Part shown: positions 5,244 through 60,517 of the stretch, one piece after another | Position numbering within the stretch: position 1 is the stretch's first letter | Layout of the letters: the number at the start of each line of letters is the position of its first letter | IMG/VR virus record: IMGVR_UViG_3300044213_000107 | Coordinates: 62,001-126,000 of that record | DNA: 64,000 nt | Direction: 5' to 3' (one strand) | The notes under the pieces: model-generated | Databases searched by the model: none | What the model saw: the letters and a program-made list of their open reading frames with translations, nothing else | What the model was told of the DNA's origin: nothing | Made by a program: the position numbers and the translations under genes

Positions 5244-5789
5244 TTATTGGCCTGAATATATGCGACGGTTAACCATTTCCCAGTTAACAATTCGCCATTG
5301 TGCAGACAAGTATTTTTTCTTGTTTGCAGCATAATCCAGTATCCAAGCGTGTTCCCACCAATCAACTAGTAGTGCTATATCAGTTTTGATAGTATGATTG
5401 CGGATAGTTTTAATAGCGCCATCGCGTGCCAAGTAAATCCATCCAGCACCCTGAAACGCCATTGCTGTACTTTCAAATTCTCGTTTAAATGTAAGGAAAT
5501 TAGTATAGTGTTTGTTTATTAACGCTAGACTAGCACCAAATGGTGTGTTGGCGTTTTTTGGCGGTCTTAGTTGTTTAAACCAAATATTGTGCAGGTAAGC
5601 ACCGGCTCGATTAAAAGCTGCATCGCCTTCACCTTGATTAAAACGATCTACATAACCTTTGTAGAGTTTATCATAGTGATTTTCGATATTAGGTTTACTA
5701 AGTACAGGTGCAAAAGAACCACAACCGTATGCAAGTTCGTATCTTTCAAGTTGTTCTTTTTCTTCTAATAAATCAATTATTTCACGCAT
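5244..5789 (-). CDS. Fe/Mn superoxide dismutase family protein
   Basis: Metal-ligand motifs ENHY, LHNIWF and DWWEHAW are present. Confidence 0.85.
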   Translation of the reverse strand: MREIIDLLEEKEQLERYELAYGCGSFAPVLSKPNIENHYDKLYKGYVDRFNQGEGDAAFNRAGAYLHNIWFKQLRPPKNANTPFGASLALINKHYTNFLTFKREFESTAMAFQGAGWIYLARDGAIKTIRNHTIKTDIALLVDWWEHAWILDYAANKKKYLSAQWRIVNWEMVNRRIYSGQ

Positions 5790-5792
5790 ATA

Positions 5793-6011
5793 TTATTTAT
5801 TGCGATATATGATGCGTCCACGGTTTATATCGTAAGGGCTCATTTCTATTTCTACGCTATCGCCCAATAATATACGTATATTATTTTGTCTAAGTTTACC
5901 ACCTAGTGTGGCTAGTACTACATGCCCAGTTTCTAATTGAACTCTAAACATCGCACTGGGCAGTACTTCGTCTATAGTGCCAGACATTTTAATTAAATCT
6001 TGTTTCGCCAT
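5793..6011 (-). CDS. infA: Translation initiation factor IF-1
   Basis: [24 protein letters not shown]...[16 protein letters not shown]...SPYD...GRIIYR. Confidence 0.97.
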
Positions 6012-6174
6012 CGTTTACTTTCGTAAGGAACCACGTGCCATCACCTTTGTCTGTCCACTTCAACGTATCTCCTTCTTTCCATCCTTTTAAATCAAGTAAT
6101 TCTTGCGGTAGTGGTAAAATCAAATCATCACTGCCGTCATCTGCTTCTTCAATTGCAACCGTCCATTGTGTCAT
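5989..6174 (-). CDS. AbrB/MazE/SpoVT-like small DNA-binding protein
   Basis: [25 protein letters not shown] swapped-hairpin pattern. Confidence 0.6.
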
Positions 6175-6187
6175 ATAGTATTTACAC

Positions 6188-6580
6188 TTATCCGCGACGC
6201 ATACGGCTAATTTCTACTGCTTCTTCTTCGGCAAAAACAGGTACAGCATTGCTCTTGTGCATGGTAGCAATACCCAATACCTTAGTGCCAGTATAAACTT
6301 TATGAACTGGAGCAGTAGAATGTCCGGGTGTTGACACGCTAGGTAAATGATTGAGATTGCCACGACCTGCGGGTGCGGATAATTTATATGATAACGGCTC
6401 TGCGGTCATTGCTCGGCGTTGGCGACGTGCATCTGCTTCAGCACCTTGGCGTTTAAGAAGTTCTTGCCATTCGCGATCTAACTGCTCGTGACGACGTTTG
6501 TCTTCGGCTGATTTGAATTTAACTTTACCTCGGCGCTTGCCTGTTAAACTTAGTGCAGGGTGTGCTAGATGCATGGTCAT
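6188..6580 (-). CDS. Phage hypothetical protein
   Basis: C-terminal YTGTKVLGIATMHKSNAVPVF motif recalled from T4-like phages; has its own sigma70 promoter. Confidence 0.6.
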   Translation of the reverse strand: MTMHLAHPALSLTGKRRGKVKFKSAEDKRRHEQLDREWQELLKRQGAEADARRQRRAMTAEPLSYKLSAPAGRGNLNHLPSVSTPGHSTAPVHKVYTGTKVLGIATMHKSNAVPVFAEEEAVEISRMRRG

Positions 6581-6607
6581 AGAAGTATCTCCGCTTAATA
6601 TAATTGT

Positions 6608-6636
6608 ATTATAACATTAGACGCAGAAACCGTCAA
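6608..6636 (-). promoter_or_regulatory. sigma70-type promoter TTGACG-17-TATAAT
   Basis: Read directly on the minus strand upstream of 6580. Confidence 0.8.
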
Positions 6637-7010
6637 GACTGTTGTTGTTTTTTAGCAACATCTTCATTTAGTGGTTGAGGAACAAAATCTGGGCTAACCA
6701 GTGCATAGTTAGCAGTAATAAACACATGATCAACAAATCTTGATTTCAATACTGAGACAATTTCATCTGTGTTTTTGCCTTGTGCAATAAATTGATTGGT
6801 GTCTTTATCAAACCAATAGTAGATATCACCAATTTTTTCTTGGTTTACCATATGTATTCGACGGTTTACTTCTTCGGCTACTTTATTATAAAATTTACCG
6901 CGACGATCAAAATAATTGTCCACTAGTGCCAATAAAAAAGAAAGCACAAAATACCAAAGTACACATTGTAAGACAAAGTCGATAAATTCCATAGTTGTAT
7001 TTATGTCCAT
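6633..7010 (-). CDS. Hypothetical protein with N-terminal transmembrane helix
   Basis: Hydrophobic N-terminus; coupled to neighbouring genes. Confidence 0.6.
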   Translation of the reverse strand: MDINTTMEFIDFVLQCVLWYFVLSFLLALVDNYFDRRGKFYNKVAEEVNRRIHMVNQEKIGDIYYWFDKDTNQFIAQGKNTDEIVSVLKSRFVDHVFITANYALVSPDFVPQPLNEDVAKKQQQS

Positions 7011-8102: not shown

Positions 8103-9120
8103 TTTTTATTCCGTATTCATATAATTCAAAACTGGCCAGGTTCTTGGCCTTGCTTTCGCACATGATATCAAACTGATCCCAAAAACTCAATGCCCACTGA
8201 TTCACTGGGCGATTCCAATAAAAGTTACTGTGTGCTCGTAGTTTTGCCTTTTTATAGCCTTCTGTGAGCAATTGTGCATGATCGGGCATTGTATCCGCAC
8301 AGTGATCAACTAAGACATCTTCTCGACTAACACTATAATGCATAGTAGGGCGTACGCCACGCCAACTATCAACCACTCGCTTAACGCTATCGCTATTTGG
8401 ATCAATGTAAACCCCTTCACGTATCCAATGATGATGTACATCAAGCACAATAGGAACAATATCGCTAATGGATAAGCAATCGTCGAGTCCATGTGTCATC
8501 TCCTCGTTTTCGATGGTGATTGTATTGCGGGCTTCAGGCGACAGTTTTGGATATGCCAACCTAATGCCGTTGGGGCCTTGACGGCCTGCGATGTGTACAT
8601 TGATTTTGAAGTCTTGGAACCGTTGTCCAAAACCCATCCAACGGGCCATGTCAACATGATATTCAAACTCCTCTATACTTCTGCGGACAATATCTGGGTT
8701 GTCACTAGCCAAGACAGTAAACTGCCCAGGGTGCATACTACAGCGAACACTCCGCAAGCGAGCCAGATCGCCGATGGTCGCAAAGTGTTTTGCACAGTAT
8801 TCACGAACGTCAGGCCGACGCCAAAAATACTGATATTCAGCATGAGTATACATAGGGAGTACGTCACTACTAAGCCGTACCATACGAAGGGATTCATCTA
8901 AGTTACCTACTCTTTCTACAAGTTTACGAACAGATTCGATATTGCCAGTCATCAAGTCCCAGAGTTTTTGCTCAGCGACTTCTCGAGTTTGGCGATTAAG
9001 CCAAGCCACAGTTGTAGTACCAGTGTTAAATTCTTTGGCGGTATCTGTTTGACGAATACCGTTGATTTGACTGGGACCGTCAATCCATTTACAGCAAAAC
9101 CCCATACGTTTAATGGTCAT
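8092..9120 (-). CDS. uvsE: UV damage endonuclease UvsE/UVDE
   Basis: RLSSD, SMHPGQFTVL, TIENEE and VLDVHHHW motifs. Confidence 0.92.
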   Translation of the reverse strand: MTIKRMGFCCKWIDGPSQINGIRQTDTAKEFNTGTTTVAWLNRQTREVAEQKLWDLMTGNIESVRKLVERVGNLDESLRMVRLSSDVLPMYTHAEYQYFWRRPDVREYCAKHFATIGDLARLRSVRCSMHPGQFTVLASDNPDIVRRSIEEFEYHVDMARWMGFGQRFQDFKINVHIAGRQGPNGIRLAYPKLSPEARNTITIENEEMTHGLDDCLSISDIVPIVLDVHHHWIREGVYIDPNSDSVKRVVDSWRGVRPTMHYSVSREDVLVDHCADTMPDHAQLLTEGYKKAKLRAHSNFYWNRPVNQWALSFWDQFDIMCESKAKNLASFELYEYGIKNGF

Positions 9121-9157
9121 AGTGTTATTATACTACAAAAACTTGAATTTTTTACAC

Positions 9158-18865: not shown

Positions 18866-19026
18866 TTTAATGCAAAGTAAGTGGCCTGCAGTGGATCTTG
18901 AAACTCAAAAGTCCAGTACCAGCTAGGGAATTGATTTTTCACTGAAAAAGCATTGTGTCCAAACTCAGATTGGCACCATAATATGGCATCGTGTACATTA
19001 TTATTAGCAAAAGTCACAGAGTTCAT
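18856..19026 (-). CDS. LRWS-family small protein, first gene of the operon
   Basis: DAILWCQSEFG...FEFQDPLQATYFALKWR; ATG 6 nt after TATAAT. Confidence 0.75.
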   Translation of the reverse strand: MNSVTFANNNVHDAILWCQSEFGHNAFSVKNQFPSWYWTFEFQDPLQATYFALKWR

Positions 19027-19032
19027 ATCTAT

Positions 19033-19061
19033 ATTATAACACAAAAGTGTTTAGTTGTCAA
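19033..19061 (-). promoter_or_regulatory. Consensus sigma70 promoter TTGACA-17-TATAAT driving the array
   Basis: Exact consensus. Confidence 0.88.
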
Positions 19062-25476: not shown

Positions 25477-26595
25477 TCAATTATCGCCCATTAATTCGTA
25501 TAGTTCTGGCAAGTACTCTCGCCAATCCATACCGTGATAATTTCGTGTATGTTCCATGTATCTGTAAAATTTTTTTCTACATTGTAGATCAAATGCACTA
25601 TTATCTATATATGCTTTTAAAAAATGTAAATCATTGTCATTTAAATAGCTAGATATTTTATCTTTTTCTTGTTCTGTTAAAATTGAATATGTTAAATATG
25701 GTGGATAACTCACAAAACCTATTTCATTAGTTAAAGAGATGCCAAGATTTTTCATATATTCGATATATTCTACTACACCAAATAAATTTAATATACTGTG
25801 TGTTGGATGAGATGCTAGATTAAATCCTTGAGATTTAAAATCAATTAAATTTAGATTGAATTTATTCCAGTCAGCACCTGTTCGTATAAATTCAAATTTT
25901 TTCTCAATTGCTTCAAAACTAACAACTAAATTAATTTTATTAAATTTTTTTAATATCGGAATATCTTTATAACTTACTGTTCCGTTTGTGTTAATATTTA
26001 AACAAGTATCGGGCCCTGCTGAATCTAATACCTTTTCTAAAAAAATACTTAACTTATTCATATTATACAACGGCTCTCCACCTATTATATTAACAAATTT
26101 TAAATTTTTAAAATCATCATCAGTGTAATCATAAACTGCAGATGGCCAAACATCTAAATTTTCAATTGACACACTAATGTCGTAATTATAAATTGTATTC
26201 GGTAATTTTAAAGCTTCGGGTATCCAACTACTGCTAGATGACGGGCGGCAATATCTACATTGGATATTACAATATCTTCCTGTATCAACAGTTAATTGCA
26301 TAAAATCTTGTACATTTGATTCTGTAGAATATAAATCTATGTAATTGGCTAAACTTAATCGTTTGCTGAAATTTTTCCCAGGGTGTAGAATTTCAGCATT
26401 ACGACATGTAGTACAATATTTTTCTGGCCATTCACCTTGGTCAAACGACTGTTTTATTTCATTGTAAACAGGACTTTGCAGCATTTTAGTGCGACTTGTT
26501 ATATTGGGTATGGGTTGAAAGCAGCACGGACCTTGGAATTGAGCATCGTATGCGTGTTCGAAATACCAGCAACGTATAGGTTCTTTTTGATTCAT
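25477..26595 (-). CDS. Radical SAM protein with N-terminal twitch/SPASM-like cluster, AT-rich
   Basis: CNIQCRYC, GGEPL and TNGT motifs; N-terminal C...PCC...CTTC. Confidence 0.9.
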   Translation of the reverse strand: MNQKEPIRCWYFEHAYDAQFQGPCCFQPIPNITSRTKMLQSPVYNEIKQSFDQGEWPEKYCTTCRNAEILHPGKNFSKRLSLANYIDLYSTESNVQDFMQLTVDTGRYCNIQCRYCRPSSSSSWIPEALKLPNTIYNYDISVSIENLDVWPSAVYDYTDDDFKNLKFVNIIGGEPLYNMNKLSIFLEKVLDSAGPDTCLNINTNGTVSYKDIPILKKFNKINLVVSFEAIEKKFEFIRTGADWNKFNLNLIDFKSQGFNLASHPTHSILNLFGVVEYIEYMKNLGISLTNEIGFVSYPPYLTYSILTEQEKDKISSYLNDNDLHFLKAYIDNSAFDLQCRKKFYRYMEHTRNYHGMDWREYLPELYELMGDN

Positions 26596-26613
26596 ACAAA
26601 TATTTAGTATATA

Positions 26614-28928: not shown

Positions 28929-30562
28929 TATTTTTTACGACCTGCTTTCATGTTAGCACACCAATGATACATTCGGCCACGTTCGCCACCTGCACGTTTG
29001 GCTCGGGCTCGCAAATCTGTAACAGAACCTTGACAACTGGCGCCAGCACGAGCTACACGACCTGGACGACTTTTTCCTTTGCGTTTACCATCAGCAAAGT
29101 TTTCCGCCACAGCTTGCTTTAGAAACTGTTCACCAGAGCCAGTCACATACCAGCGGTCATCGTCATTTACAATATAACCAGCATCTGCTAAACTATCCAA
29201 GGTACGGTCAAACATTTCAGTTCTAGACTCATCTTCTACATAGTCCATGCCCAACATTGCTGCAGTATAGATACCTTTTAGTATAAGTCTTTGTCCTAAT
29301 CCTTGACCTCTAAACTCAGGATCAAGCTCAGTAATAGTCCTTCCGGTATCGGCATCATATTGAAATACGCCTGCTGATTTACCATTCACTAACATTTCAA
29401 CAGAAAATTTATTTTTACCTTTTTGTTGTTGATATGTAATGTTGTTAGAGCCTTCCGCCACACCTCGACCTAAATCACCCAATCCAAAATCTGTTGGTGG
29501 CACATACTTACCATCGTGTTGTTTAATATGGTCTGCTAAGTCTGCTAAATCTCTAAACCCACGATCTTGTAATTCTTGATCCACATCAACTAATTCTTTA
29601 CCACCCCACTTGTATAGATCGAGTTCCATACGACCTATATCCTGATGCTTTTTTAAACCACTGATAACATATCCTACAATACTATCAAAGTTTACATCTT
29701 GACGGTCTTGATCCAAGTCGCTCACGACGCCTTCCGCCACACCTTGCTTAACAAACTGAACATTTAATTTAGCATTTTTCCACAATGGATTTTTAGGATC
29801 CATTCGTTGTTGTAGCAACCATATAGCGGATACTCTATGTGCTCCATCTTCAAACTTACTATTCAGTACCAATATAGGAGGTAACTTTGATAAACTTTCT
29901 GGATGATCCTTTAAGTAAGCGGCATACTCTATAACCTTTTTAGTGACGCCCCAGCTGTAATCTTTAGCGTCCCAATCATCTACCACATTGTTATAATAAG
30001 GTAATCCTGGTACTGAATCTATAAGTTGTTTTGCAGTCATCTGCCTGGTTTGTATTTTAGCGTCAGAGCCAAACTGTTTTGGTGCACCTGAACTTGGACC
30101 AGGTTGTGGAATATCTTCCGCCACATCTTGATTACGATACAAATCAAACTCTACTTGATCGCCTTGATCATGTGCTCTTACACCATATCCCAAATTGGTT
30201 GCGTAACGGTCAACTAATTTCTTATAAAGTTTAGCACGACTCTCGGGATTTTGCCCGGGTTCAACTTCTTTTGTGGCTGAAAAATTTATGTTATACGGTT
30301 GTTCTTTTTTTACAAACTGTTGAATAGCAAACAACACCGTGGCAAACACTCGTTGTGCATCACCAGCACCAGTGACATCTATACTGTGATCTCTGGTAAA
30401 ACTTACAAGTACTTCGTAAGGGGTTGAATATTCAAATGATATACTCAATGGTGAACCATCTGGCAAGCGAGCAAACGCATCATTGTCCCCGTGATCACCT
30501 CGGCTCCACGTTAATGGGTAAGGTTGGTCAAAAGATTCTAAAATAATTTCTTTAATACGCAT
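28928..30562 (-). CDS. Modular putative virion polyprotein (ParB/Srx-like and GNAT-like modules) with VAE linkers
   Basis: MRIKEIILES leader; four VAE linkers; LPPILV...EDGAHR; PEFRGQGLG; basic C-terminal module NFADGKRKGKSRPG...HWCANMK. Confidence 0.65.
   Translation of the reverse strand: MRIKEIILESFDQPYPLTWSRGDHGDNDAFARLPDGSPLSISFEYSTPYEVLVSFTRDHSIDVTGAGDAQRVFATVLFAIQQFVKKEQPYNINFSATKEVEPGQNPESRAKLYKKLVDRYATNLGYGVRAHDQGDQVEFDLYRNQDVAEDIPQPGPSSGAPKQFGSDAKIQTRQMTAKQLIDSVPGLPYYNNVVDDWDAKDYSWGVTKKVIEYAAYLKDHPESLSKLPPILVLNSKFEDGAHRVSAIWLLQQRMDPKNPLWKNAKLNVQFVKQGVAEGVVSDLDQDRQDVNFDSIVGYVISGLKKHQDIGRMELDLYKWGGKELVDVDQELQDRGFRDLADLADHIKQHDGKYVPPTDFGLGDLGRGVAEGSNNITYQQQKGKNKFSVEMLVNGKSAGVFQYDADTGRTITELDPEFRGQGLGQRLILKGIYTAAMLGMDYVEDESRTEMFDRTLDSLADAGYIVNDDDRWYVTGSGEQFLKQAVAENFADGKRKGKSRPGRVARAGASCQGSVTDLRARAKRAGGERGRMYHWCANMKAGRKK
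29102..30127 (-). repeat. Four copies of GTGGCGGAA (V-A-E) at module junctions
   Basis: TTCCGCCAC on the plus strand begins at 29102, 29453, 29732 and 30116. Confidence 0.9.
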
Positions 30563-30605
30563 CTAAATATTTATCGGACTTTTGGCTAAAAAGAAGTAAA
30601 GTAAA

Positions 30606-31319: not shown

Positions 31320-31343
31320 CTAATATTTAGCGGTAACTGCGGT

Positions 31344-31762: not shown

Positions 31763-31781
31763 AGAAATATTTAGCCGTAGA

Positions 31782-36048: not shown

Positions 36049-36056
36049 ACGAATAT

Positions 36057-48690: not shown

Positions 48691-49816
48691 GAATGTCCTT
48701 GTTAATTGGTATCGTATAATATATCAAAATTTTTTACAAAATTTAGATTGTCTGTCTATATATCCTGCTGAGTTTGATAAAGAGTTTCCTTACTATAAAT
48801 TTAATGGTCTTCCGGAATATTCTAAAACCATGACCAAATATAGAGCTTTGTTTTTTGATCAAGAGCCGATATATATAAACCTGATGACAAAAATGCTAGA
48901 TAATTTTAAATTTCATATAAAGCATAAATCATTATTATTTTTTAGCACAGAAATTAGTAAAGATAAAGACATTGTCGTTGAAAAATATAAAATGAACGAC
49001 GTGTATTATTTTTATCATGCAATTGCTGCGCAAGAAATGTATCTAGATGGATTTTACTTGAATCAAGATTTCAATTTAAATTTTGATAAAGTATTTATAT
49101 CATACAATAATTTAATTAATAATAATAGAGTCTATAGATCAGATTTTGTTGCTAGATTGTATGAAAAGAATCTAATTAACGAAGGATATTTAAGTTATAA
49201 CACCAATGGCAACAATTCTATTTTAGAAGATATTGGTTTTCCGTTATTGCCTACTTCAAGTAAAGAAATTATACTTAAAAATATAGACGACCTAAATAAA
49301 AAACTCATAATTGACCACGAAGTTGTTACAGGTGCTATGAGCAGTTCATCGGGATTAGAAAACAATCTACGTGCATTTGTTCATGTAGTAACAGAAACTA
49401 TTTTTTATGAACAAAAATTACATCTAACAGAAAAGATCTTTAAACCAATAGTTAGTAAGCAACCTTTTCTGCTATTAGCTGCACCGGGTAATCTAGAATA
49501 TCTAAAAGGGTACGGATTTAAAACATTCAGTGATTTTTGGGACGAAGGGTACGATAAAATCATCAATCCTGCAAAAAGGATCGAAGCGGTTGTTGCAATA
49601 CTTGAATCTCTTGCAGGTAAATCGCACTGCGAGTTAGTGGCAATGAAATCAGCGATGAGAGATATACTAGAACACAATCATTATCATTTTTATCATACAC
49701 TGAGGCCTATGGTAGTAACAGAACTTACTGACAATATGGCCAAAGGGTTAGCGTCTGCAGAAATACCATATAACACTAACGATTTACAACACCTTAATCA
49801 AATTCTTTGCTACTAA
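48614..49816 (+). CDS. AT-rich hypothetical protein; paralog of 43122
   Basis: HVVTET...HLTEKIFKPI...PF...NLEYLK.YGFKTF...WDEGYD; start uncertain. Confidence 0.6.
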   Translation: MLAITSAQAKPNFPIPINPTFFLLLMNVLVNWYRIIYQNFLQNLDCLSIYPAEFDKEFPYYKFNGLPEYSKTMTKYRALFFDQEPIYINLMTKMLDNFKFHIKHKSLLFFSTEISKDKDIVVEKYKMNDVYYFYHAIAAQEMYLDGFYLNQDFNLNFDKVFISYNNLINNNRVYRSDFVARLYEKNLINEGYLSYNTNGNNSILEDIGFPLLPTSSKEIILKNIDDLNKKLIIDHEVVTGAMSSSSGLENNLRAFVHVVTETIFYEQKLHLTEKIFKPIVSKQPFLLLAAPGNLEYLKGYGFKTFSDFWDEGYDKIINPAKRIEAVVAILESLAGKSHCELVAMKSAMRDILEHNHYHFYHTLRPMVVTELTDNMAKGLASAEIPYNTNDLQHLNQILCY

Positions 49817-49823
49817 ATACTAG

Positions 49824-50744
49824 ATGAAAATTAGTGATGTATTGAATGATGATATTTCTCGCCGTGGTTTTTTGCGTGGACTAGCAGGAGCTGCCGCAGT
49901 AGGTGCAACCGGGGCTCATGCTACTGCAAAATCTATTGTGTATCAAGTAGTAGAACCCGGTGACACTGTTTATTCAATTGCACAGCAAAATGGCATGCGG
50001 CCCGAAGATTTATTTCGGTTAAACAATCTAAACAAGAACTCTAAATTGATTCCCGGACAAAAAATACGTGTGCCGGATACATCAAAAATGATTCCTGATC
50101 CTGCGGTACAAATTCCCACTGATGAATTAGGAAACTTTATTTCTAGCATTGATCAACACAAAGTTGATCAAATAATGCATAGATATGTTACAGCCAAAGA
50201 AAAAGAATCGATCATCCCACCTCCCGCAGACTCACACAAAAAATCAACTGCTAAATCTCACGAATACAAGCCAGTGACAAACAGTCCGTTTGAGTTGGTG
50301 TTGCGCAATGTTGCCATGCGTGCAGGAATTATTAAATCAGAATTGGCTGCATTTATGGGGCAATGTGCACACGAATCAGCAAAATTTACCACAGTAAAAG
50401 AACTAGACAGTGGCAGTAAATATGAAGGTCGTCGTGACATAGGAAACATTTATCCCGGGGATGGACAAAAATACAAAGGTCGTGGATTTATACAAATTAC
50501 CGGCAGATATAATTATACAGAAGCGTCCAAGGATCTGGGAATAGATCTAGTCAATCATCCCGAGCTAGCCGAAAGACCTGATGTAGCAGCTCGTGTGAGT
50601 ATTTGGTTCTGGCAAAAATTTGTTCAACCAAAGATTAAAAATTGGGCCGATAATCGTGCAGTTACTCGTGTAATCAATCCAGGATTACGTGGTGAAAAAA
50701 ATCGAGAAAAATATACTCAAAGTTTTAAAACAGCCGGGCTATAA
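49824..50744 (+). CDS. LysM plus glycoside hydrolase family 19 peptidoglycan hydrolase with a twin-arginine motif
   Basis: SRRGFL; VEPGDTVYSIA LysM; AAFMGQCAHES...YKGRGFIQITGRYNY. Confidence 0.9.
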   Translation: MKISDVLNDDISRRGFLRGLAGAAAVGATGAHATAKSIVYQVVEPGDTVYSIAQQNGMRPEDLFRLNNLNKNSKLIPGQKIRVPDTSKMIPDPAVQIPTDELGNFISSIDQHKVDQIMHRYVTAKEKESIIPPPADSHKKSTAKSHEYKPVTNSPFELVLRNVAMRAGIIKSELAAFMGQCAHESAKFTTVKELDSGSKYEGRRDIGNIYPGDGQKYKGRGFIQITGRYNYTEASKDLGIDLVNHPELAERPDVAARVSIWFWQKFVQPKIKNWADNRAVTRVINPGLRGEKNREKYTQSFKTAGL

Positions 50745-51121
50745 TTAAACAAAGTTTTTAAAACTTTACCTGCCGGTTCAAAATTTTCTTCCATGATATG
50801 TTCAGCAAGTCCATATGCTGTTGTGCCCATATCTTTATAATAAGTTTCGCTAGGCCATTTATTTCGACGCAATGGATAACTATGAATTAGTAAACATTCG
50901 TCGCCGACTGATAATAAATTTTCTTTTCTATTAGAATTAACCGCTAGCAATAGTTGCATAGCAACGGCTTCATTGCCAATATTGATCCGTTCAAAGTTTC
51001 GTGCCATTAGATGCACAACATAAGCCTCAACGTCGTGATCTAAAATAATATTGCTACGACTTTCACTTTCAATAACTAAATCGTAACAACTCTTTACATA
51101 TTCAAACCAGTGTTTGCTCAT
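50717..51121 (-). CDS. Hypothetical protein
   Basis: VEAYVVHL...LLSVGDECL; TAAATA motif upstream. Confidence 0.6.
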   Translation of the reverse strand: MSKHWFEYVKSCYDLVIESESRSNIILDHDVEAYVVHLMARNFERINIGNEAVAMQLLLAVNSNRKENLLSVGDECLLIHSYPLRRNKWPSETYYKDMGTTAYGLAEHIMEENFEPAGKVLKTLFNYSPAVLKL

Positions 51122-51132
51122 GTAAATATTTA

Positions 51133-51342: not shown

Positions 51343-51343
51343 T

Positions 51344-52468: not shown

Positions 52469-53194
52469 TTATTGCATATTAGCAATGATAAATTCTGCTT
52501 CGGGAATTCTAGTATGACCGTTTTGACTACCGAGTACCACAACCCGGCGAATACCACGGTCAGTTTTTACAGTTAGTATAATACAACCACCAGCGGCATG
52601 TGTGGTTCCGGTTTTGCTTACAATAAATTCGTAGGTTTTTCCAATTAATGGATTTGTATTTTTGAATATTAAATATTTTTTTCGAAGCTGTATTTCTACT
52701 TTTGTTTGTTTTGCCGCACTAACTATTAACGGATATTGTTCTGCTTGATTTAATAACTTCAGTAAGTCGTTTGCTGTACTTGTATTTTCTGCGTTTAACC
52801 CAGATGCGTCGGCATAGGTAGTATTGTTCATGCCAAATTCACGAGCATACATATTCATGTCTGCAACACACCCTGCATAACTTCGTGTATAGTTTTTACA
52901 TAACATATCAGCGGCATGATTGTCACTGTGCACAAGAGTTAGGTAAATTAACTCCTGCCGTGTTAAACGTAGTTGTCGATTGTATTGAAATGTTTGATCT
53001 AGTGGTTGATTTGCTCGTAATACTGCAATAACTGTCATTACCTTTGTAACACTAGCAATTGACAATACTTCATCTCTGTTTTTACCATCCAATATTACGT
53101 TGTCTTGATCAGCAATCAGCCAAGACTTGGCAGTTAGATCTTTGGCCGACACTGCGCAACTTAGAAAAAATAACAAATATATTAGGTACCGCAT
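52469..53194 (-). CDS. D-alanyl-D-alanine carboxypeptidase/endopeptidase (peptidase S11)
   Basis: SVTK (SxxK), SDN (SxN) and KTG motifs; signal peptide; promoter TTGATA-17-TATAAT at 53201-53229. Confidence 0.92.
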   Translation of the reverse strand: MRYLIYLLFFLSCAVSAKDLTAKSWLIADQDNVILDGKNRDEVLSIASVTKVMTVIAVLRANQPLDQTFQYNRQLRLTRQELIYLTLVHSDNHAADMLCKNYTRSYAGCVADMNMYAREFGMNNTTYADASGLNAENTSTANDLLKLLNQAEQYPLIVSAAKQTKVEIQLRKKYLIFKNTNPLIGKTYEFIVSKTGTTHAAGGCIILTVKTDRGIRRVVVLGSQNGHTRIPEAEFIIANMQ

Positions 53195-53211
53195 GTGCGT
53201 ATTATAACAGA

Positions 53212-54222
53212 TTACTTTGTACTTATCAAGTTATTTTCAAAGATTTCCCAGGCTCTTTGCCAAGTCCAACGTTGACTGCCTGCATGTACCTGTGTTCGGT
53301 CCATTTCTAGACATTTCTCAACTGCCACAGACAAACTCTCACAATCTGGATCTACCATGAATCCGGTTACGCCTTGGTCAACCACATCTGCTGGACCTTG
53401 GCATCGGTAGGCTGCCACCGGAGTACCGCAGGCCATGGCTTCAATCATCACAATACCAAATGTCTCCCATCGACTGGGAAATACAAATACTTCGGCATTG
53501 GCATAGTACTCAGCCAACTCTATGCCGGTTTTGAATCCAGTGAAATGCACTTCAGGATATCGTTTTTTGTAGGTTTCCAACATGGGCCCGTCGCCTACCA
53601 TGATTTTGAGATATCCTGGATAGTCCAACTGAAAAAAATCTTCCAGATTCTTTTCCTTGCTTACTCTGCTAACACACAACAGATATTTTCCTGGAAGATT
53701 TTTTCTAAGCTCAGGATCAAATATAGTTCGATCAACACCGCGAGTCCAGGGTATGATTTCACCATCAAAGCCGTGTGCACGCAGTTCTTTGACCATGCTG
53801 TCTGTGGTGGTCAAGACCTTGCCCGAGTGCTTGTGGAACCAGCGCACAAAACGCCAGGTGATCCATTCAGGAACGCCCAAGATCTTTTTCAACCCTTCAG
53901 GAAACTTAGTATGATAAGCGGTATTGTGCCTAACACCAACCAGTGATAGATATGCTCGAGCCCACAGACCCAAAGGACCTTCTGTTTGGATGTGTATATA
54001 ATCCGGAGCAATCTCCTCGATCTTCTCCCCAATATTGCTAGGCCAGGCCAATTTGACTTCGTTGTAGCCAGGGCAATCAATATAGCTGAAGCACCCGGGG
54101 TGCAGATTATGAACAATATAACCATCCCGTAACGCAAGCGCCTCAATATTTTTGTAAGTAGTAACGACACCATTTATTTGGTCAGGAAGATTATCCCCGA
54201 TCATTAGTATTTTCTTTGACAA
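53212..54222 (-). CDS. Glycosyltransferase family 4
   Basis: DNLPDQINGV, TEGP.G, VSRVSKEKN and ETFGIVMIEAMACGTPV; TTG start inside the endonuclease gene. Confidence 0.92.
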   Translation of the reverse strand: MSKKILMIGDNLPDQINGVVTTYKNIEALALRDGYIVHNLHPGCFSYIDCPGYNEVKLAWPSNIGEKIEEIAPDYIHIQTEGPLGLWARAYLSLVGVRHNTAYHTKFPEGLKKILGVPEWITWRFVRWFHKHSGKVLTTTDSMVKELRAHGFDGEIIPWTRGVDRTIFDPELRKNLPGKYLLCVSRVSKEKNLEDFFQLDYPGYLKIMVGDGPMLETYKKRYPEVHFTGFKTGIELAEYYANAEVFVFPSRWETFGIVMIEAMACGTPVAAYRCQGPADVVDQGVTGFMVDPDCESLSVAVEKCLEMDRTQVHAGSQRWTWQRAWEIFENNLISTK

Positions 54223-54832
54223 CTTTCCATCCTTTATGAATCATGACATCTCCTTTAACTAAATGCCGAACTGCTTTTGGTCTCAAATTATATTTTGTAG
54301 CAAATTCTAATTTAGATCCAGAGAATCTATTACCGTCTTTATGTTCAAACACATGAGAGGTTGGGTCATAATTGGGATTATTCATTCCGCTTTGATTTGG
54401 TCGATTATTTCTAAACTCTGAGTCTTGCCATAATTTCAATGAATTTTCTCTTTGTTTCTGTTTGTATTTCAATGAACTATATGTTGTTTTTCTTGCTTCT
54501 CGAATCTTATCCTTATATCCCGGTTGTAACCATAATTCCTTCATCCATTCCGTTGTATTACCATTACCTTCTTCGGGTTTAAGATTAGCCCACTCTCTTG
54601 AATTTACAATATTCCATAAATCACTATAATGTTTACCCCAATAAATCATTTCATCTCTACTTACACATTCTTTAATAACTTCAGTTGTTACATCATATCC
54701 GTGAACTTTGAGATGTTTTTTCCAATATTTGCCAGACCCAGGGTACTTGTTATAATCTTGTCTTGTAGTCTGACAGAGATATTTTAATCCTGTTTTATTG
54801 TGTGTTTTAACCAGCAGATAAATTGTTTTCAT
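54191..54832 (-). mobile_element. Free-standing GIY-YIG-like (Seg-type) homing endonuclease
   Basis: IYLLVKTHNKTGLKYLCQT...YPGSG..W; C-terminal NUMOD-like NNPNY...F..KY.L; own TAAATA promoter. Confidence 0.8.
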
Positions 54833-54858
54833 ATCTTTATTTATGCTAGACCGGACTC

Positions 54859-55875: not shown

Positions 55876-56620
55876 TTGATTGTGTCCATGTTACTATTTC
55901 CCAGGTGCCGTTATGATGTTCAACCAAAGCAGTACACGACTCGACCCAGTCACCATCGTTCATATAAGTTATATCATCTATGTATTTAATCTCAGCATGA
56001 TGTATGTGTCCGCAGATAACACCGTCATATCCACGCTTTTTACAATAATTTGCAATTGTAACTTCAAATTTAAACATAAAGTCTATGGCTTTTTTGACTC
56101 TGTGTTTAAGGTATTTGCTAAGGCTCCAGTAACCGAACCCCAAACGATGGCGGATCCAATTAAATCTGCTATTGACACCAAGAATGAAATCATATGCTTT
56201 ATCTCCAAGAAAACTCAACCACGGTGCCAATCTTGTAATACCATCAAACATATCTCCGTGCACCACAAGATAATGTCGGCGATCCACCCCAATGTGTTCT
56301 GTTTGATTGCATATCTCTACACTGCCAAACGTGGCGGCATAAGGCATCATTGGTCGTAAAAATTCATCGTGATTACCAGCTATGTAAACAACTCGTGTAC
56401 CACGTTTGGCATGACCCAATATACGGCGAATCACATTAGTATGGCTTTGCTTCCATCGAAGTTTGTTTTGTTGTATCTTCCAAGCATCAATTATATCTCC
56501 TACTAGATATAAAGTTTCGCAAGTATTGTGTTTAAGAAAATTGTTTAATTGCTCGGCCTTACAATCTTTTGTGCCAAGATGTACATCACTGACAAAGATA
56601 CTACGATAGGTTTTTTGCAT
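55841..56620 (-). CDS. UDP-2,3-diacylglucosamine diphosphatase-like (LpxH-like) metallophosphoesterase
   Basis: SDVHLG, GDIID, GNHD, HGD, GHIHH and NDGDWVES motifs. Confidence 0.88.
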   Translation of the reverse strand: MQKTYRSIFVSDVHLGTKDCKAEQLNNFLKHNTCETLYLVGDIIDAWKIQQNKLRWKQSHTNVIRRILGHAKRGTRVVYIAGNHDEFLRPMMPYAATFGSVEICNQTEHIGVDRRHYLVVHGDMFDGITRLAPWLSFLGDKAYDFILGVNSRFNWIRHRLGFGYWSLSKYLKHRVKKAIDFMFKFEVTIANYCKKRGYDGVICGHIHHAEIKYIDDITYMNDGDWVESCTALVEHHNGTWEIVTWTQSNDSIDNIKTRT

Positions 56621-56668
56621 ACTAGTATTTACGCAAAAACTTTTGGAGAAATATTACAAGTATATTAC

Positions 56669-56896
56669 CTATCGTTTGGTAGGATGAAAACTGTTGACTT
56701 CTCGCTGACCGTCTCGAACTTTTTTGGTGCAACTTATTCGTAAATCTAAATTGGTAATACGATCGCAATCACCGACATTTAAGGTCGCTATTGCCATACA
56801 TTGTATTTTTTCATTGCCGCGTAATCTTGCACAATCATTAATATCAATTGCGTGAGAAAATACAGGAATTAGTAAAATTACGAGCATGTAATACAT
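56669..56896 (-). CDS. Small secreted Cys-rich protein
   Basis: Signal peptide; four Cys residues. Confidence 0.6.
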   Translation of the reverse strand: MYYMLVILLIPVFSHAIDINDCARLRGNEKIQCMAIATLNVGDCDRITNLDLRISCTKKVRDGQREVNSFHPTKR

Positions 56897-56916
56897 AATG
56901 TATTTACTTGAGACGT

Positions 56917-57957: not shown

Positions 57958-58212
57958 TTATTTGTCTAATCTGCGAAAGGTATCTTCGCAGACATAATCT
58001 GTACCTTTGGTTATAATGACATTATGATTACAACGGTATTCGCAGAGTCTATTACCGTGGTCGTCGATCCTTACGGATGTGATGTGGCAAGACTCTACTT
58101 CGGCTATAATTCCCGGAGGATTGATTGTGATATTAACCGATTTGGGTATTAGCGGGGCAACTGTGGTTGCGGTTACCGTTGCTACTAATATTAGTTTACT
58201 CGGCGTTTTCAT
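57958..58212 (-). CDS. Small secreted Cys-containing protein
   Basis: Likely start MKTPSKL after TAAATA; hydrophobic N-terminus. Confidence 0.55.
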   Translation of the reverse strand: MKTPSKLILVATVTATTVAPLIPKSVNITINPPGIIAEVESCHITSVRIDDHGNRLCEYRCNHNVIITKGTDYVCEDTFRRLDK

Positions 58213-58263
58213 AAATGTATTTACAGCACGAATCACACAATGTTATCTGCTAATAAATCGCCA

Positions 58264-58288: not shown

Positions 58289-58342
58289 GTTCTGGTTACG
58301 AGTTCCAGTATCCACTCTATCGGTGTGGTCGGTTTTTATCTA

Positions 58343-58888: not shown

Positions 58889-58962
58889 TTTTGTATTTCC
58901 TTTATTAAATGATTGCTTAGATCATATTATATATTTATGTAAAAGCAAGGTCAAGAATTATA

Positions 58963-59265
58963 TTATATGTTTTTGCCCAATTTGATTAAATGTGCCTCAT
59001 CACCAACTCCAACTACGCAAGCAACACTATCATTATACTCTATCATAGTCCAACTGTGAGTCGTTGGATTTGTAGTTAAAATGTATTTTGAATTATCACC
59101 TGCGCCACGCCAAAATGGTTGTTCTTGAAATTCGCTGGATACGTATTCGATAACCGTTTTCAAACTACTACAAACAACTGGTTTTTCTGCTTTATAAACT
59201 TGGGCGTTGGCTACAAGACTGGTTAAGGCTAATAGGAACGCTACCGAGATTTTCCACATAGCCAC
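58963..59265 (-). CDS. Secreted hypothetical protein
   Basis: Signal peptide; KPVVCS...WTMIE...ACVVGVG. Confidence 0.6.
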   Translation of the reverse strand: MAMWKISVAFLLALTSLVANAQVYKAEKPVVCSSLKTVIEYVSSEFQEQPFWRGAGDNSKYILTTNPTTHSWTMIEYNDSVACVVGVGDEAHLIKLGKNI

Positions 59266-59280
59266 TCCTTAAAATAGTAT

Positions 59281-59454
59281 TTAGTGCCCAGGCCAGGAGA
59301 ACCAACTATATTTTTGTAATTGACGTATTACTTCGTCTTCGTTTTCTCTAAATTCTTTTGCAGCCAGCTCAACAAATACTACCCAACTATTAGCATAATC
59401 ATCACAGCCTTGTTGCCATTGTTGGTACATATCACGGACTACGTATTCATTCAT
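59281..59454 (-). CDS. 57-aa hypothetical protein (not in the ORF track)
   Basis: MNEYVVRDMYQQWQQG...KYSWFSWPGH; ATGA coupling. Confidence 0.5.
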   Translation of the reverse strand: MNEYVVRDMYQQWQQGCDDYANSWVVFVELAAKEFRENEDEVIRQLQKYSWFSWPGH

Positions 59455-59603
59455 TGAGTGGGTGTTTGTTTAGATTGTGCGGGTTCAGTGGGTTTGGTAG
59501 CAGCTTTGGTTTCTTTGAGTAGGCGTGTGGCAGCAGGACTAGAACGATGTACAACAGGTGCAGGTGTGTGTTTCGGGGCGGGATTGCGTTTGAACCAACT
59601 CAT
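59451..59603 (-). CDS. 50-aa Pro/Lys-rich protein (not in the ORF track)
   Basis: MSWFKRNPAPKHTPAPVVH...; TAAATA motif upstream. Confidence 0.5.
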   Translation of the reverse strand: MSWFKRNPAPKHTPAPVVHRSSPAATRLLKETKAATKPTEPAQSKQTPTQ

Positions 59604-59658
59604 GTTTTCTCTCTATATAAAATATTTACAGAGAAAACAATAAATTTATATGCCCAGT

Positions 59659-59964
59659 TTAACCTCGTTCACATACCACGGTATAAAAACTATCTAGTTC
59701 TCCACCAAATTTTCCCATTAGATGTTCAGCAATATCCCTGCACAATTTGTAATTTTCTTGTGCTGCCGAAGCCAAAAACTCGTCATGAAACCGGCGCCAG
59801 TAATCGAGCATTTCTATTTCTTTTGTGGGTATCCTTGCAGTCTCAACTACACAATAGGGTTCTAAGGATTGTCCATTTTCTGCAACTATTGTTTCTAGTT
59901 TAAAAATAGTAAATTGCCCATCTAACTCAGATGGCAACATAGACTTATCAAATATAATATTCAT
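59659..59964 (-). CDS. Hypothetical protein
   Basis: Likely start MNIIFDK; ends GKFGGELDSFY. Confidence 0.6.
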   Translation of the reverse strand: MNIIFDKSMLPSELDGQFTIFKLETIVAENGQSLEPYCVVETARIPTKEIEMLDYWRRFHDEFLASAAQENYKLCRDIAEHLMGKFGGELDSFYTVVCERG

Positions 59965-60497
59965 TGTTTTTGTATTCCTAATTTGCGATAAACCTGTTGA
60001 ACTGCAATGGCTTGGCTTACACAATCTTCTAAAGCGTTATGCAGTCCTGCTTTGCCTTTGACCCTAGGATCACCGTGCACACCAAACAAGGTGCGACTAT
60101 CACGTATTTGCCAAAACTGCCAGGGTGTGGGCCAGCCATATTGACGATATAGGTTTTCTAAGATGGCAATATCAAACACCGGACCTTGTGCCCAAATATT
60201 ATTTACACCAACTAAAAATCTGTTCAATTGACGATACATTTCCTCTACAGGAACGCGACCTTCGGTGCCCAGTGCTTCTTCGCGAACGTCATCGGCTTGG
60301 TCCATCCACCAACGAACAGTATCATCTTGTACTTCACGACCACGAGCAATCTGCTCATCCACATCCGGTCTAATGTATAAACCAGGTCCAGGGTCAGTTA
60401 AAGTAAAAGGATTAAATTTAACTGCGCCCAGTGTAAGTATAACACACTCTGGGCGAGTTCCTAAGGTTTCTAAATCAAGCATACAATCTTGTGTCAT
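59961..60497 (-). CDS. DEDDh 3'-5' exoribonuclease (RNase T/Rv2179c-like)
   Basis: MLDLETLG, WAQGPVFD, RDSRTL and HNALEDC motifs; promoter TTGACA-17-TATAAT at 60504-60532. Confidence 0.9.
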   Translation of the reverse strand: MTQDCMLDLETLGTRPECVILTLGAVKFNPFTLTDPGPGLYIRPDVDEQIARGREVQDDTVRWWMDQADDVREEALGTEGRVPVEEMYRQLNRFLVGVNNIWAQGPVFDIAILENLYRQYGWPTPWQFWQIRDSRTLFGVHGDPRVKGKAGLHNALEDCVSQAIAVQQVYRKLGIQKQ

Positions 60498-60517
60498 GCT
60501 TGTATTATACTGGGTTT

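What the first reader, a model, noticed from the sequence alone, without database searches (positions are those of the whole stretch)
5789..60510. Systematic leaderless architecture: TAAATA-N4/5-ATG and TATAAT-N6-ATG
Seen: at least 13 genes have ATG only 4-5 nt after a T4-like late promoter core TAAATA, leaving no room for an SD (starts 5789, 6174, 26595, 30562, 31319, 31762, 36048, 49824, 51121, 54832, 56620, 56896, 58212). Four more have ATG 6 nt after a sigma70 -10 (9120, 19026, 53194, 60497). Other genes have strong AAGGAG sites. Inference: a substantial class of leaderless phage mRNAs coexists with phage bS21 and IF-1, which suggests control through the mode of initiation.
Basis: partly seen in the sequence, partly recalled or inferred. 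Interest (0 to 1): 0.6.

Follow-up and report, generated by a model that had tools for sequence, protein, structure and literature searches.

The report
Leaderless genes behind phage promoters
In this uncultured freshwater giant phage, about one gene in eight starts so close to its promoter that its mRNA should begin at the AUG with no ribosome-binding leader; relatives and the cultured ocean phage HTVC008M show the same layout, though no RNA data exist yet.

Summary
All 17 listed sites exist as described. In the window, TAAATA-N4/5-ATG occurs 16 times against 4.6 expected, and TATAAT-N6-ATG 7 times against 1.9.

The window belongs to a 261-kb fragment of a roughly 350-kb freshwater jumbo phage with T4-type replication genes. 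Four near-complete relatives encode a gp55-type late sigma factor.

- **Spacing.** The distance from TAAATA to a gene start is bimodal in all four genomes analysed: 4-7 nt (no leader) or 16-32 nt (short leader, often AAGGAG). The 9-15 nt range is almost empty.
- **Start codon.** Only ATG is enriched at the short spacing.
- **Conservation.** Orthologues at 23-85% amino-acid identity keep the arrangement.
- **Other phages.** T4, KVP40 and S-PM2 lack it. Pelagibacter phage HTVC008M has it at the annotated starts of gp2, gp4 and gp48.

The best reading is true leaderless mRNAs from two promoter classes: about 27 late and 6-10 sigma70-type among 282 called genes. No RNA data exist, so transcription starts are inferred.

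The proposed link to phage bS21 and IF-1 is untested. Both genes are conserved in the clade, along with an initiator-like tRNA. However, the bS21-carrying phages PA5oct, SCTP-2 and Melnitz do not show this motif-to-ATG pattern.

The parts
5787..5799 (-). Late-type promoter core TAAATA, N4, then the ATG of a 181-aa Fe/Mn superoxide-dismutase-like gene (5244-5789). The TAA of the hexamer is the stop codon of IF-1.
   Evidence: Pfam Sod_Fe_C; orthologues in G001, G003 and G004 all keep TAAATA-N4/5-ATG
5793..6011 (-). Phage IF-1 gene (72 aa). It has no SD, and its start overlaps the end of the upstream 61-aa ORF.
   Evidence: Pfam PF01176, E 3e-22; sequence; conserved in G001/3/4
6172..6184 (-). 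TAAATA-N4-ATG of a 61-aa AbrB/SpoVT-like ORF (5989-6174), the first gene of the unit that contains IF-1. The AbrB/SpoVT label rests on reading the sequence, with no family scan.
   Evidence: the arrangement is not conserved at the orthologues
6990..7003 (-). Possible extra case: TAAATA-N5-ATG for a 119-aa ORF (6633-6992). An in-frame ATG lies 18 nt upstream, so the start is uncertain.
9118..9132 (-). TATAAT-N6-ATG of a UvdE UV-endonuclease gene (8092-9120). The -35 is weak here.
   Evidence: orthologues in G003 and G004 have TTGACT/TTGACC-N17-TATAAT-N6-ATG
19024..19061 (-). TTGACA-N17-TATAAT-N6-ATG of a 56-aa ORF (18856-19026).
26593..26606 (-). TAAATA-N5-ATG of a 372-aa radical-SAM gene (25477-26595). 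A terminator-like hairpin ends 19 nt upstream of the ATG.
30560..30573 (-). TAAATA-N5-ATG of a 544-aa modular gene (28928-30562). An in-frame stop lies 3 nt upstream.
31317..31329 (-). TAAATA-N4-ATG of a 237-aa gene (30606-31319).
   Evidence: the G003 orthologue keeps the arrangement, while the G004 orthologue is SD-led
31760..31773 (-). TAAATA-N5-ATG of a 103-aa gene (31451-31762). A terminator-like hairpin ends 21 nt upstream.
36046..36059 (-). TAAATA-N5-ATG of a 187-aa GNAT acetyltransferase gene (35485-36048).
49814..49826 (+). TAAATA-N4-ATG of a 306-aa transglycosylase/endolysin-like gene (49824-50744). This is the only plus-strand case.
51119..51132 (-). TAAATA-N5-ATG of a 134-aa gene (50717-51121).
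53192..53229 (-). TTGATA-N17-(TG)TATAAT-N6-ATG of a 241-aa D-Ala-D-Ala carboxypeptidase-like gene (52469-53194).
54830..54843 (-). TAAATA-N5-ATG of a 213-aa gene (54191-54832).
56618..56631 (-). TAAATA-N5-ATG of a 259-aa metallophosphoesterase gene (55841-56620).
   Evidence: orthologues at 78-85% identity: G003 and G004 have TAAATA-N4, G001 has the variant TAAGTA-N4
56894..56906 (-). TAAATA-N4-ATG of a 75-aa ORF (56669-56896). A hairpin plus T-run lies just upstream.
58210..58223 (-). TAAATA-N5-ATG of an 84-aa ORF (57958-58212).
60495..60532 (-). TTGACA-N17-TATAAT-N6-ATG (12 of 12 consensus) of a 178-aa 3'-5' exonuclease gene (59961-60497).
   Evidence: orthologues keep the -35/-10 with N5-6 to the ATG and degenerate hexamers
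62734..62973 (-). Phage ribosomal protein bS21 gene (79 aa). TAAATA lies 26 nt upstream, and the leader has no SD.
   Evidence: Pfam PF01165, E 6e-18

Best explanation
The window is part of an uncultured freshwater jumbo phage of about 350 kb when complete. It has T4-type replication genes. Its near-complete relatives encode a gp55-family late sigma factor.

The phage uses two promoter classes. One is the host sigma70 type, TTGACA-N17-TATAAT. The other is a gp55-type late promoter, (A/C)TAAATA, with no -35 element.

In about one third of late promoters, and in a handful of sigma70-type promoters, the -10 element lies 4-6 nt (late) or 6-7 nt (sigma70) upstream of an ATG. The predicted +1 is then the A of the start codon. 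These mRNAs would begin with 5'-AUG, carry no Shine-Dalgarno sequence, and be read by the leaderless pathway, in which a 70S ribosome or a 30S-IF2-fMet-tRNA complex binds a 5'-terminal AUG.

The remaining promoters lie 16-32 nt upstream and give short leaders, often with AAGGAG. Intermediate distances are avoided: they are too long for a 5'-terminal AUG and too short to hold an SD.

What is shown: the motifs, the spacing, the enrichment, the restriction to ATG, the conservation in orthologues, the presence of the sigma factor in relatives, and the same layout in HTVC008M.

What is inferred: the transcription start positions, the use of gp55 for TAAATA, and the translation pathway.
For: - **Enrichment.** Excess in the window and in the whole genome. 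At called gene starts the odds ratio is 47-166, with p < 1e-29 in each of four genomes.
- **Bimodal distance.** The TAAATA-to-start distance peaks at 4-7 and at 16-32 nt. Only 2 counts fall at 9-15 nt across the four genomes. The sigma70-type pattern shows the same two modes, at 6 nt and around 27-31 nt.
- **Same element in both classes.** T is disfavoured just before TAAATA and G just after it in both leaderless and leadered genes. In leadered genes an A-rich position sits 5-6 nt downstream, exactly where the A of ATG sits in leaderless genes.
- **ATG only.** GTG and TTG show no peak at the short spacing.
- **Unambiguous starts.** Many cases have an in-frame stop 3-15 nt upstream and no alternative start. 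N-termini align from residue 1 in orthologues.
- **Conservation.** Among N-terminally aligned orthologue pairs there are 13 both-leaderless, 8 + 10 discordant and 236 neither, giving OR 38 and p 4e-11. Sigma70-type cases are also conserved, with drifting hexamers but fixed geometry.
- **Terminators.** Four or five late cases have a terminator hairpin ending 19-22 nt before the ATG. TAAATA is then the only possible promoter and there is no room for an SD.
- **Late sigma in relatives.** phrog_12791 at E 1e-74 and phrog_234 at 2e-22. Its absence from this record fits the missing segment.
- **Contrast phages.** T4's TATAAATA-to-ATG distances peak at 23-29 nt with no short peak. KVP40 and S-PM2 show no excess.
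- **Independent lineage.** HTVC008M has N5 = 14 against a background of about 3. Seven annotated CDS starts in a 15-kb stretch, including gp2, gp4, gp48 and the tape measure, coincide with the pattern.
Against: - There is no RNA evidence. Only freshwater DNA metagenomes hold this sequence, so no transcription start has been mapped.
- The late sigma gene is not in this 261-kb fragment.
- No gp45-family clamp was detected in any clade member.
- In 6-9 of the 27 late cases the TAA of TAAATA is the stop codon of the upstream gene. Read-through transcripts with termination-reinitiation could also express those genes.
- The first 40 nt of leaderless candidates fold only slightly more weakly than those of other genes. 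The difference is not significant in any single genome.
- My gene calls and start choices are home-made, and the start scoring gave a bonus to these motifs. The raw spacing histograms and the first-start counts do not depend on that scoring.
Confidence: 0.78

Rival explanations
1. Stop-start coupling, not leaderless transcripts. TAAATA is mostly the stop codon TAA of the upstream gene plus AT-rich filler. The ATG 7-8 nt later is reached by ribosomes that terminate and reinitiate on a polycistronic mRNA, without needing an SD.
For: In 6-9 of 27 late cases in this genome the upstream same-strand gene ends within 12 nt, and the TAA of the hexamer is its stop codon. Examples are IF-1 followed by the SOD-like gene at 5789, and the sites at 36048 and 49824. 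IF1 strongly stimulates 70S scanning and reinitiation (PMC9031893).
Against: - Eighteen of the 27 cases have gaps of 14 nt or more, many above 40 nt, or follow a terminator hairpin.
- The full hexamer TAAATA is fixed, with shared flanking preferences.
- The same hexamer sits 16-32 nt upstream of SD-led genes, where it cannot be a stop-start signal.
- The sigma70-type cases have complete -35/-10 promoters.
- In HTVC008M, gp2 and gp4 are divergent with a 26-bp spacer, so no upstream gene exists on either strand.
Confidence: 0.1
2. TAAATA is an AU-rich, SD-independent ribosome-loading element on longer mRNAs, for example bound by ribosomal protein bS1. It is not a promoter.
For: The element is AT-rich and lies just upstream of the start codon. 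About 40% of called genes here have no recognisable SD.
Against: - The hexamer and its spacing are strict.
- The distance distribution is bimodal with an empty 9-15 nt zone.
- The motif also lies upstream of SD sites in leadered genes.
- It resembles the late promoter box of gp55-type phages, NATAAATA or TATAAATA (PMC2984593).
- A gp55-family sigma is present in relatives.
- Terminators lie directly upstream of some sites.
Confidence: 0.06
3. The pattern is chance in AT-rich DNA, or comes from mis-called starts.
For: The genome is 38% GC. Dinucleotide shuffles already give about 27 TAAATA-N4-6-ATG per genome. A few listed or detected sites are not genes or have doubtful starts: 55977, 36185, 62708 and 45969.
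Against: - No shuffle reached the observed counts.
- The association with gene starts has p < 1e-29 in four genomes of 38-47% GC.
- Orthologues conserve the arrangement.
- Independently annotated CDS starts in HTVC008M coincide with the pattern.
Confidence: 0.03

Closest known systems
Thermus phage phiYS40 middle/late leaderless transcripts (Sevostyanova et al. 2007, as summarised in PMC3594737)
   Same: It is a large lytic phage in which many genes have the promoter -10 element directly abutting the start codon, so the mRNAs lack a leader. A change in initiation-factor balance has been proposed to favour those mRNAs.
   Different: - In phiYS40 most middle and late transcripts are leaderless, and the host (Thermus) itself uses leaderless mRNAs widely (PMC12340547).
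- Here only about a third of late promoters and a few early-type promoters are leaderless, alongside strong SD use.
- The late promoter here is of the gp55 type.
- phiYS40 alters host IF2 and IF3 levels, whereas this phage encodes IF-1, bS21 and an initiator-like tRNA itself.
T4 late promoters (gp55, gp33 and the gp45 clamp; TATAAATA box; PMC2988020)
   Same: Both have an AT-rich -10-type box without a -35 element, and both depend on a gp55-family sigma, which here is encoded by the relatives. The predicted distance from box to +1 is the same.
   Different: - T4's late boxes lie 23-29 nt from the ATG, with SD-bearing leaders and no short-spacing peak.
- The core here is (A/C)TAAATA rather than TATAAATA.
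- No gp45-family clamp was detected.
- gp33 was not tested.
Lambda cI mRNA from PRM and other single leaderless phage genes (PMC10491246)
   Same: A sigma70 promoter whose +1 is the A of AUG, giving translation from a 5'-terminal AUG in an SD-using proteobacterial host.
   Different: Those are isolated regulatory genes. Here the layout covers dozens of genes in two promoter classes and is conserved across a clade.
Host genomes with a -10 region adjacent to ORFs (Deinococcus-Thermus, PMC12340547; mycobacteria, PMC4633059)
   Same: The genomic signature is the same: a -10 hexamer at a fixed short distance from ATG.
   Different: Those are cellular genomes in which leaderless initiation is a lineage-wide habit. 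Here it is a phage feature, and it involves a phage-specific sigma.
Pelagibacter phage HTVC008M (cultured; Kyanoviridae)
   Same: It shows the same TAAATA-N5-ATG layout at annotated starts of late genes, and it also encodes bS21.
   Different: It is a 147-kb phage of a different lineage with an extended motif, ATAAATAGT. No IF-1 was found by tblastn with the window's protein. I found no paper describing this layout in it.

Membership tests
Leaderless mRNA | The transcription start lies at, or within a few nt of, the start codon. | not testable with these tools
   No RNA runs hold this sequence. The feature is inferred from -10-to-ATG distances of 4-6 nt (late) and 6-7 nt (sigma70).
Leaderless mRNA | The start codon is AUG; near-cognate starts are poorly tolerated at a 5' end. 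| tested here: met
   Only ATG is enriched at the short spacing. GTG and TTG are at background.
Leaderless mRNA | There is no Shine-Dalgarno sequence between the transcript start and the AUG. | tested here: met
   Only 4-7 nt separate the -10 element from the ATG. Terminator hairpins end 19-22 nt upstream in several cases.
Leaderless mRNA | The 5' coding end is unstructured. | tested here: inconclusive
   Mean folding energy of the first 40 nt is weaker than for other genes in all four genomes, but p is 0.06-0.39 per genome.
T4-type (gp55) late promoter | An AT-rich TATAAATA-like box at -10 with no conserved -35. | tested here: met
   The core is TAAATA, with A or C preferred before it, G avoided after it, and no upstream conservation. 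It is a variant of the NATAAATA/TATAAATA box (PMC2984593).
T4-type (gp55) late promoter | The phage encodes a gp55-family sigma. | tested here: inconclusive
   It is absent from this 261-kb fragment. It is present in all four near-complete relatives (phrog_12791, E 1e-74). The relatives' region holding it has no counterpart in this fragment.
T4-type (gp55) late promoter | Activation by a gp45 sliding clamp together with the gp33 co-activator. | tested here: not met
   phrog_223 (gp45) gave no hit in this record or in the four relatives. The control genomes also gave no hit, so the negative is weak. gp33 was not searched.
Sigma70 promoter | A TTGACA-like -35, a 16-18 bp spacer and a TATAAT-like -10. 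| tested here: met
   60497 matches 12 of 12. 53194 matches 11 of 12 and has TG. 19026 has TTGACA-N17-TATAAT. 9120 has a weak -35 here but a good one in its orthologues.
phiYS40-type temporal switch to leaderless translation | Early genes are leadered, and most middle and late genes are leaderless. | tested here: not met
   About 30 of roughly 77 promoter-proximal late genes are leaderless, and sigma70-type (presumably early) leaderless genes also exist.

The most novel reading that the evidence does not exclude
The phage-encoded IF-1, bS21 and initiator-like tRNA form a module that retunes host ribosomes late in infection towards 5'-terminal-AUG and SD-less initiation. IF-1 and bS21 both sit behind late-type promoters. 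On this reading, promoter-to-ATG fusion would be a phage-controlled translational channel, evolved at least twice in gp55-type phages: in this freshwater jumbo clade and in pelagiphage HTVC008M.
Probability: 0.2. Interest if true: 0.85.

Novelty: new variant of a known kind. Interest (0 to 1): 0.6.

Why it matters
Leaderless phage mRNAs are known, for example lambda cI and Thermus phage phiYS40. I found no description of them behind gp55-type late promoters, or as a conserved genome-wide class in a jumbo phage of an SD-using host. The jumbo phages with mapped 5' ends have none: phiKZ has no leaderless transcripts (PMC8244752) and AR9 has UTRs of 26-491 nt (PMC5312081).

The bimodal promoter-to-ATG distance with an empty middle zone is a clean sequence signature. 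It could be used to improve start-codon and promoter calling in uncultured phages.

The same layout in the cultured phage HTVC008M makes the prediction directly testable. It also offers a concrete, falsifiable role for phage-borne IF-1, bS21 and initiator tRNA, whose function in huge phages is still open (PMC7162821, PMC6375957).

Tried and rejected
- **Close relatives in the phage collection.** Megablast of 8 kb of the window against the phage collection found nothing.
- **The 544-aa protein as a marker.** tblastn gave only weak N-terminal hits to KVP40-like Vibrio phages. Its IMG/VR relatives are modular and unsuitable for upstream comparison.
- **Sequencing runs.** Only freshwater DNA metagenomes hold the sequence. 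There is no RNA, so read laying was not used because contigs cannot show 5' ends.
- **gp55 and gp45 in this record.** Neither was found. No Sigma70_r2 was found in any clade genome. No IF3 or peptide deformylase was found.
- **5' folding energy.** The trend goes the expected way but is not significant.
- **Host inference.** UDP-glucose dehydrogenase homologues gave a taxonomically mixed list and no answer.
- **A bS21-to-leaderless correlation.** PA5oct, SCTP-2 and Melnitz carry bS21 but show no excess of TAAATA-N4/5-ATG. This test is blind to other late-promoter motifs, so it neither supports nor excludes the link.
- **TATAAT-N6/7-TTG excess.** On inspection these sites open only short ORFs.
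- **Rejected starts.** 62708 and 45969 were rejected as true sigma70-type leaderless starts.
- **phiYS40 primary paper.** It was not available in the library, so it is cited through reviews.

Full report
**1. What the window is**

The window is bases 62001-126000 of a 260,723-bp IMG/VR virus record. The record is linear and estimated 74% complete. It has 38% GC, and almost all genes lie on the minus strand.

It has no close relative among deposited phages. tblastn finds homologues of T4 gp43, gp44, gp41 and UvsX.

Four near-complete IMG/VR jumbo phages (G001-G004; 320-349 kb; G001, G003 and G004 were fetched and have 44-47% GC) are syntenic relatives. G001 shares 135 reciprocal best hits with this record at a mean 49% amino-acid identity. 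Only freshwater DNA metagenomes contain the sequence.

**2. The observation**

Every one of the 17 sites exists as described.

Within the window, TAAATAN{4,5}ATG occurs 16 times against 4.6 +/- 2.2 in dinucleotide shuffles, with 0 of 100 shuffles reaching 16. Fifteen matches are on the gene-rich minus strand, and the one plus-strand match precedes a plus-strand gene. TATAAT-N6-ATG occurs 7 times against 1.9 +/- 1.5.

In the whole record, TAAATA-to-ATG spacings 4/5/6 count 12/27/10 against about 5 for other spacings. TATAAT-to-ATG spacings 6/7 count 16/13 against about 5.5. Shuffles in 2-kb blocks give 26.8 +/- 5.0 against 49 observed, and 16.2 +/- 3.9 against 29 observed.

Most of these ATGs open long ORFs with an in-frame stop a few codons upstream and no alternative start.

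**3. Gene-level analysis**

I called genes with a simple coding-potential model, giving 282 in this record and 330-343 in each of three relatives. I then classified the starts.

| Class in this record | Genes |
|---|---|
| TAAATA at N4-6 | about 27 |
| TATAAT at N6-7 (upper bound; 2-3 are doubtful) | about 10 |
| SD core of 5 nt or more | 80 |
| SD core of 4 nt | 52 |

ATGs that are called starts carry TAAATA at N4-6 far more often than other ATGs. The odds ratio is 47-166, with p < 1e-29 in each genome.

The start scoring gave a bonus to these motifs. The raw histograms and the count for the first start in each ORF (23 of 284) do not depend on that bonus.

**4. The strongest internal evidence**

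The distance from TAAATA to the called start is bimodal in all four genomes. One peak lies at 4-7 nt and a broad peak lies at 16-32 nt. Only 2 counts fall at 9-15 nt across all four genomes.

The far class has short leaders, often with AAGGAG 5-8 nt before the ATG.

Both classes share the same flanking preferences. T is avoided just before the hexamer and G just after it. In leadered genes the position 5-6 nt downstream of the hexamer is A-rich, exactly where the A of ATG lies in the near class.

This is what a -10-type promoter box with a fixed start site predicts: either no leader, or a leader long enough for an SD.

Sigma70-like patterns (TTGAnn-N16-18-TAnnnT) show the same two modes, at 6 nt and around 27-31 nt.

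Only ATG, not GTG or TTG, is enriched at the short spacing. That fits the known need for a 5'-terminal AUG.

Four or five late cases follow a terminator-like hairpin that ends 19-22 nt before the ATG. TAAATA is then the only possible promoter.

In a consensus scan of 52-61 kb, the best and the joint second-best sigma70 matches on the coding strand are the ones abutting the ATGs at 60497 and 53194.

**5. Conservation**

The relatives show the same spacing peak: counts at spacings 4 and 5 are 7 and 18 in G001, 13 and 14 in G003, and 9 and 14 in G004, against a background of 1-3.

Orthologues keep the arrangement although the surrounding sequence has diverged:
- the SOD-like gene downstream of IF-1, in 3 of 3 relatives;
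- a 378-aa radical-SAM gene, in 3 of 3 at 35-38% identity;
- a 519-aa gene, in 3 of 3;
- a 167-aa gene, in 3 of 3;
- the metallophosphoesterase, in 2 of 3 plus a TAAGTA variant.

The sigma70-type cases at 9120 and 60497, and two outside the window, keep the -35, the 17-bp spacer and N5-6 to the ATG while the hexamers drift.

Over N-terminally aligned orthologue pairs the association has OR 38 and p 4e-11. There is also clear turnover, with 18 discordant pairs. Many leaderless genes in the window are lineage-specific.

**6. Who reads TAAATA**

All four relatives encode a gp55-family late sigma. The G001 protein scores E 1e-74 against phrog_12791 and 2e-22 against phrog_234. It sits behind a sigma70-type promoter with an AGGAG leader.

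This record lacks the gene. It also lacks any counterpart of the first 50 kb or so of G001, where that gene lies.

No gp45-family clamp was found in the clade, but the control genomes were also silent, so the negative is weak.

The box resembles the NATAAATA/TATAAATA late boxes of cyanophages, KVP40 and T4 (PMC2984593, PMC2988020).

**7. What the leaderless genes are**

The late-type leaderless genes are mostly accessory genes:
- Fe/Mn SOD-like;
- three radical-SAM enzymes;
- a GNAT acetyltransferase;
- a metallophosphoesterase;
- a Clp-like ATPase (at N7);
- a transglycosylase/endolysin-like protein;
- several unknowns.

The sigma70-type leaderless genes are a UvdE endonuclease, a D-Ala-D-Ala carboxypeptidase-like protein and a 3'-5' exonuclease.

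Very large, presumably structural genes use leadered late promoters.

**8. Comparison with other phages**

| Phage | bS21 | TAAATA-N4/5-ATG vs control pattern |
|---|---|---|
| T4 | no (tblastn) | 10 vs 12; TATAAATA-to-ATG distances peak at 23-29 nt |
| KVP40 | not tested | no excess |
| S-PM2 | not tested | no excess |
| HTVC008M | yes | 16 vs 7; N5 = 14 vs about 3 at other spacings |
| PA5oct | yes | 20 vs 30 |
| SCTP-2 | yes | 33 vs 38 |
| Melnitz | yes | 5 vs 3 |

In HTVC008M the extended motif is ATAAATAGT. In one 15-kb stretch, 7 of 19 complete annotated CDS start exactly 5 nt after TAAATA. They include gp2, gp4, gp48 and the tape-measure gene. gp2 and gp4 are divergent, with a 26-bp spacer that holds both boxes.

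The test on the bS21 phages sees only this one motif.

**9. The translation-factor link**

IF-1 and bS21 are real and conserved in the clade.
- IF-1 has no SD. It overlaps a late-leaderless 61-aa ORF, and its stop codon forms part of the next late box.
- bS21 has a late box 26 nt upstream and no SD.
- The clade also carries an initiator-like tRNA with a C1xA72 mismatch.

According to a review, IF1, IF2 and especially extra fMet-tRNA stimulate leaderless translation, whereas IF3 inhibits it (PMC9031893). The idea is therefore plausible.

It remains unproven, for three reasons. Leaderless genes occur in both promoter classes and are a minority. The cross-phage association is mixed. bS21 is usually tied to SD-dependent initiation (PMC6375957, PMC7162821).

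**10. Literature**

Leaderless phage mRNAs are known for:
- lambda cI (PMC10491246);
- phiYS40, where most middle and late transcripts are leaderless and IF2 rises while IF3 falls (PMC3594737).

-10 boxes adjacent to ORFs are typical of Deinococcus-Thermus (PMC12340547).

Among jumbo phages with mapped 5' ends, phiKZ has no leaderless transcripts (PMC8244752) and AR9 has UTRs of 26-491 nt (PMC5312081).

My searches found no report of leaderless genes behind gp55-type late promoters, or in HTVC008M.

**11. Verdict**

The most likely mechanism is genuine leaderless mRNAs from two promoter classes. I put this at about 0.78, limited by the lack of 5'-end data.

The bS21/IF-1 control hypothesis remains a speculative but testable extension, at about 0.2.

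This is a new variant of a known kind.

Noticed in passing
window 5793-6174 (- strand): IF-1 has no SD. Its ATG lies inside the last 23 nt of a 61-aa AbrB/SpoVT-like ORF that is itself late-leaderless, which suggests translational coupling. The TAA stop of IF-1 doubles as the first three bases of the TAAATA box of the next gene, and this overlap is kept in G001, G003 and G004.
   Followed up: partly
window 62734-62999 (- strand): bS21 has a TAAATA box 26 nt upstream of its ATG and an AT-rich leader without an SD. It is probably a late gene with a non-SD leader.
   Followed up: partly
G000 genome 195743-204218 (outside the window; L160): There is a cluster of 25 tRNA genes. It includes an initiator-like tRNA-CAT (CGCGGG acceptor stem, C1xA72 mismatch) at 202383-202457, with counterparts in G001, G003 and G004.
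   Followed up: partly
G001 105048-105526 and G004 341148-341593: Both relatives carry a permuted (two-piece) tmRNA gene with tag ANDSQFALAA. HTVC008M also has a permuted tmRNA. This hints at a proteobacterial host, but the host remains unknown.
   Followed up: no
L152:1441-2420 (G001): The gp55-like late sigma gene of the relative is preceded by TTGACA-N17-TACAAT and an AGGAG leader. The late sigma would therefore be made from a host-type, SD-led early transcript.
   Followed up: partly
HTVC008M (NC_020484) 18916-18943: The divergent late genes gp2 and gp4 are separated by only 26 bp. That spacer holds two back-to-back TAAATA-N5-ATG units, leaving no room for any leader on either side.
   Followed up: yes
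window 25477-26595 and 10331-11434; G000 genome 22499-23635 and 52814-53869: There are several radical-SAM paralogues. Three of them sit behind late leaderless promoters, and a pair of amidoligase-domain proteins (630 and 738 aa) is also present. This looks like a sizeable accessory enzyme set of unknown pathway.
   Followed up: no
L185 (PBPT01000016.1, a 335-kb contig of a 'Neomarinimicrobiota' MAG): It carries a UDP-glucose dehydrogenase 64% identical to the phage's. The contig size suggests it could be a mis-binned jumbo phage rather than host DNA.
   Followed up: no
window 28928-30562 (- strand): The 544-aa protein is modular. Its C-terminal ~65 residues hit hundreds of IMG/VR contigs, and an MRxxEFI-type N-terminal module recurs at different positions in relatives.
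   Followed up: partly
window 62706-62720 and 45969: Two TATAAT-N6 start candidates are probably false. At 62708 the orthologues begin about 25 codons later behind AAGGAG. At 45969 the codon is TTG.
   Followed up: yes
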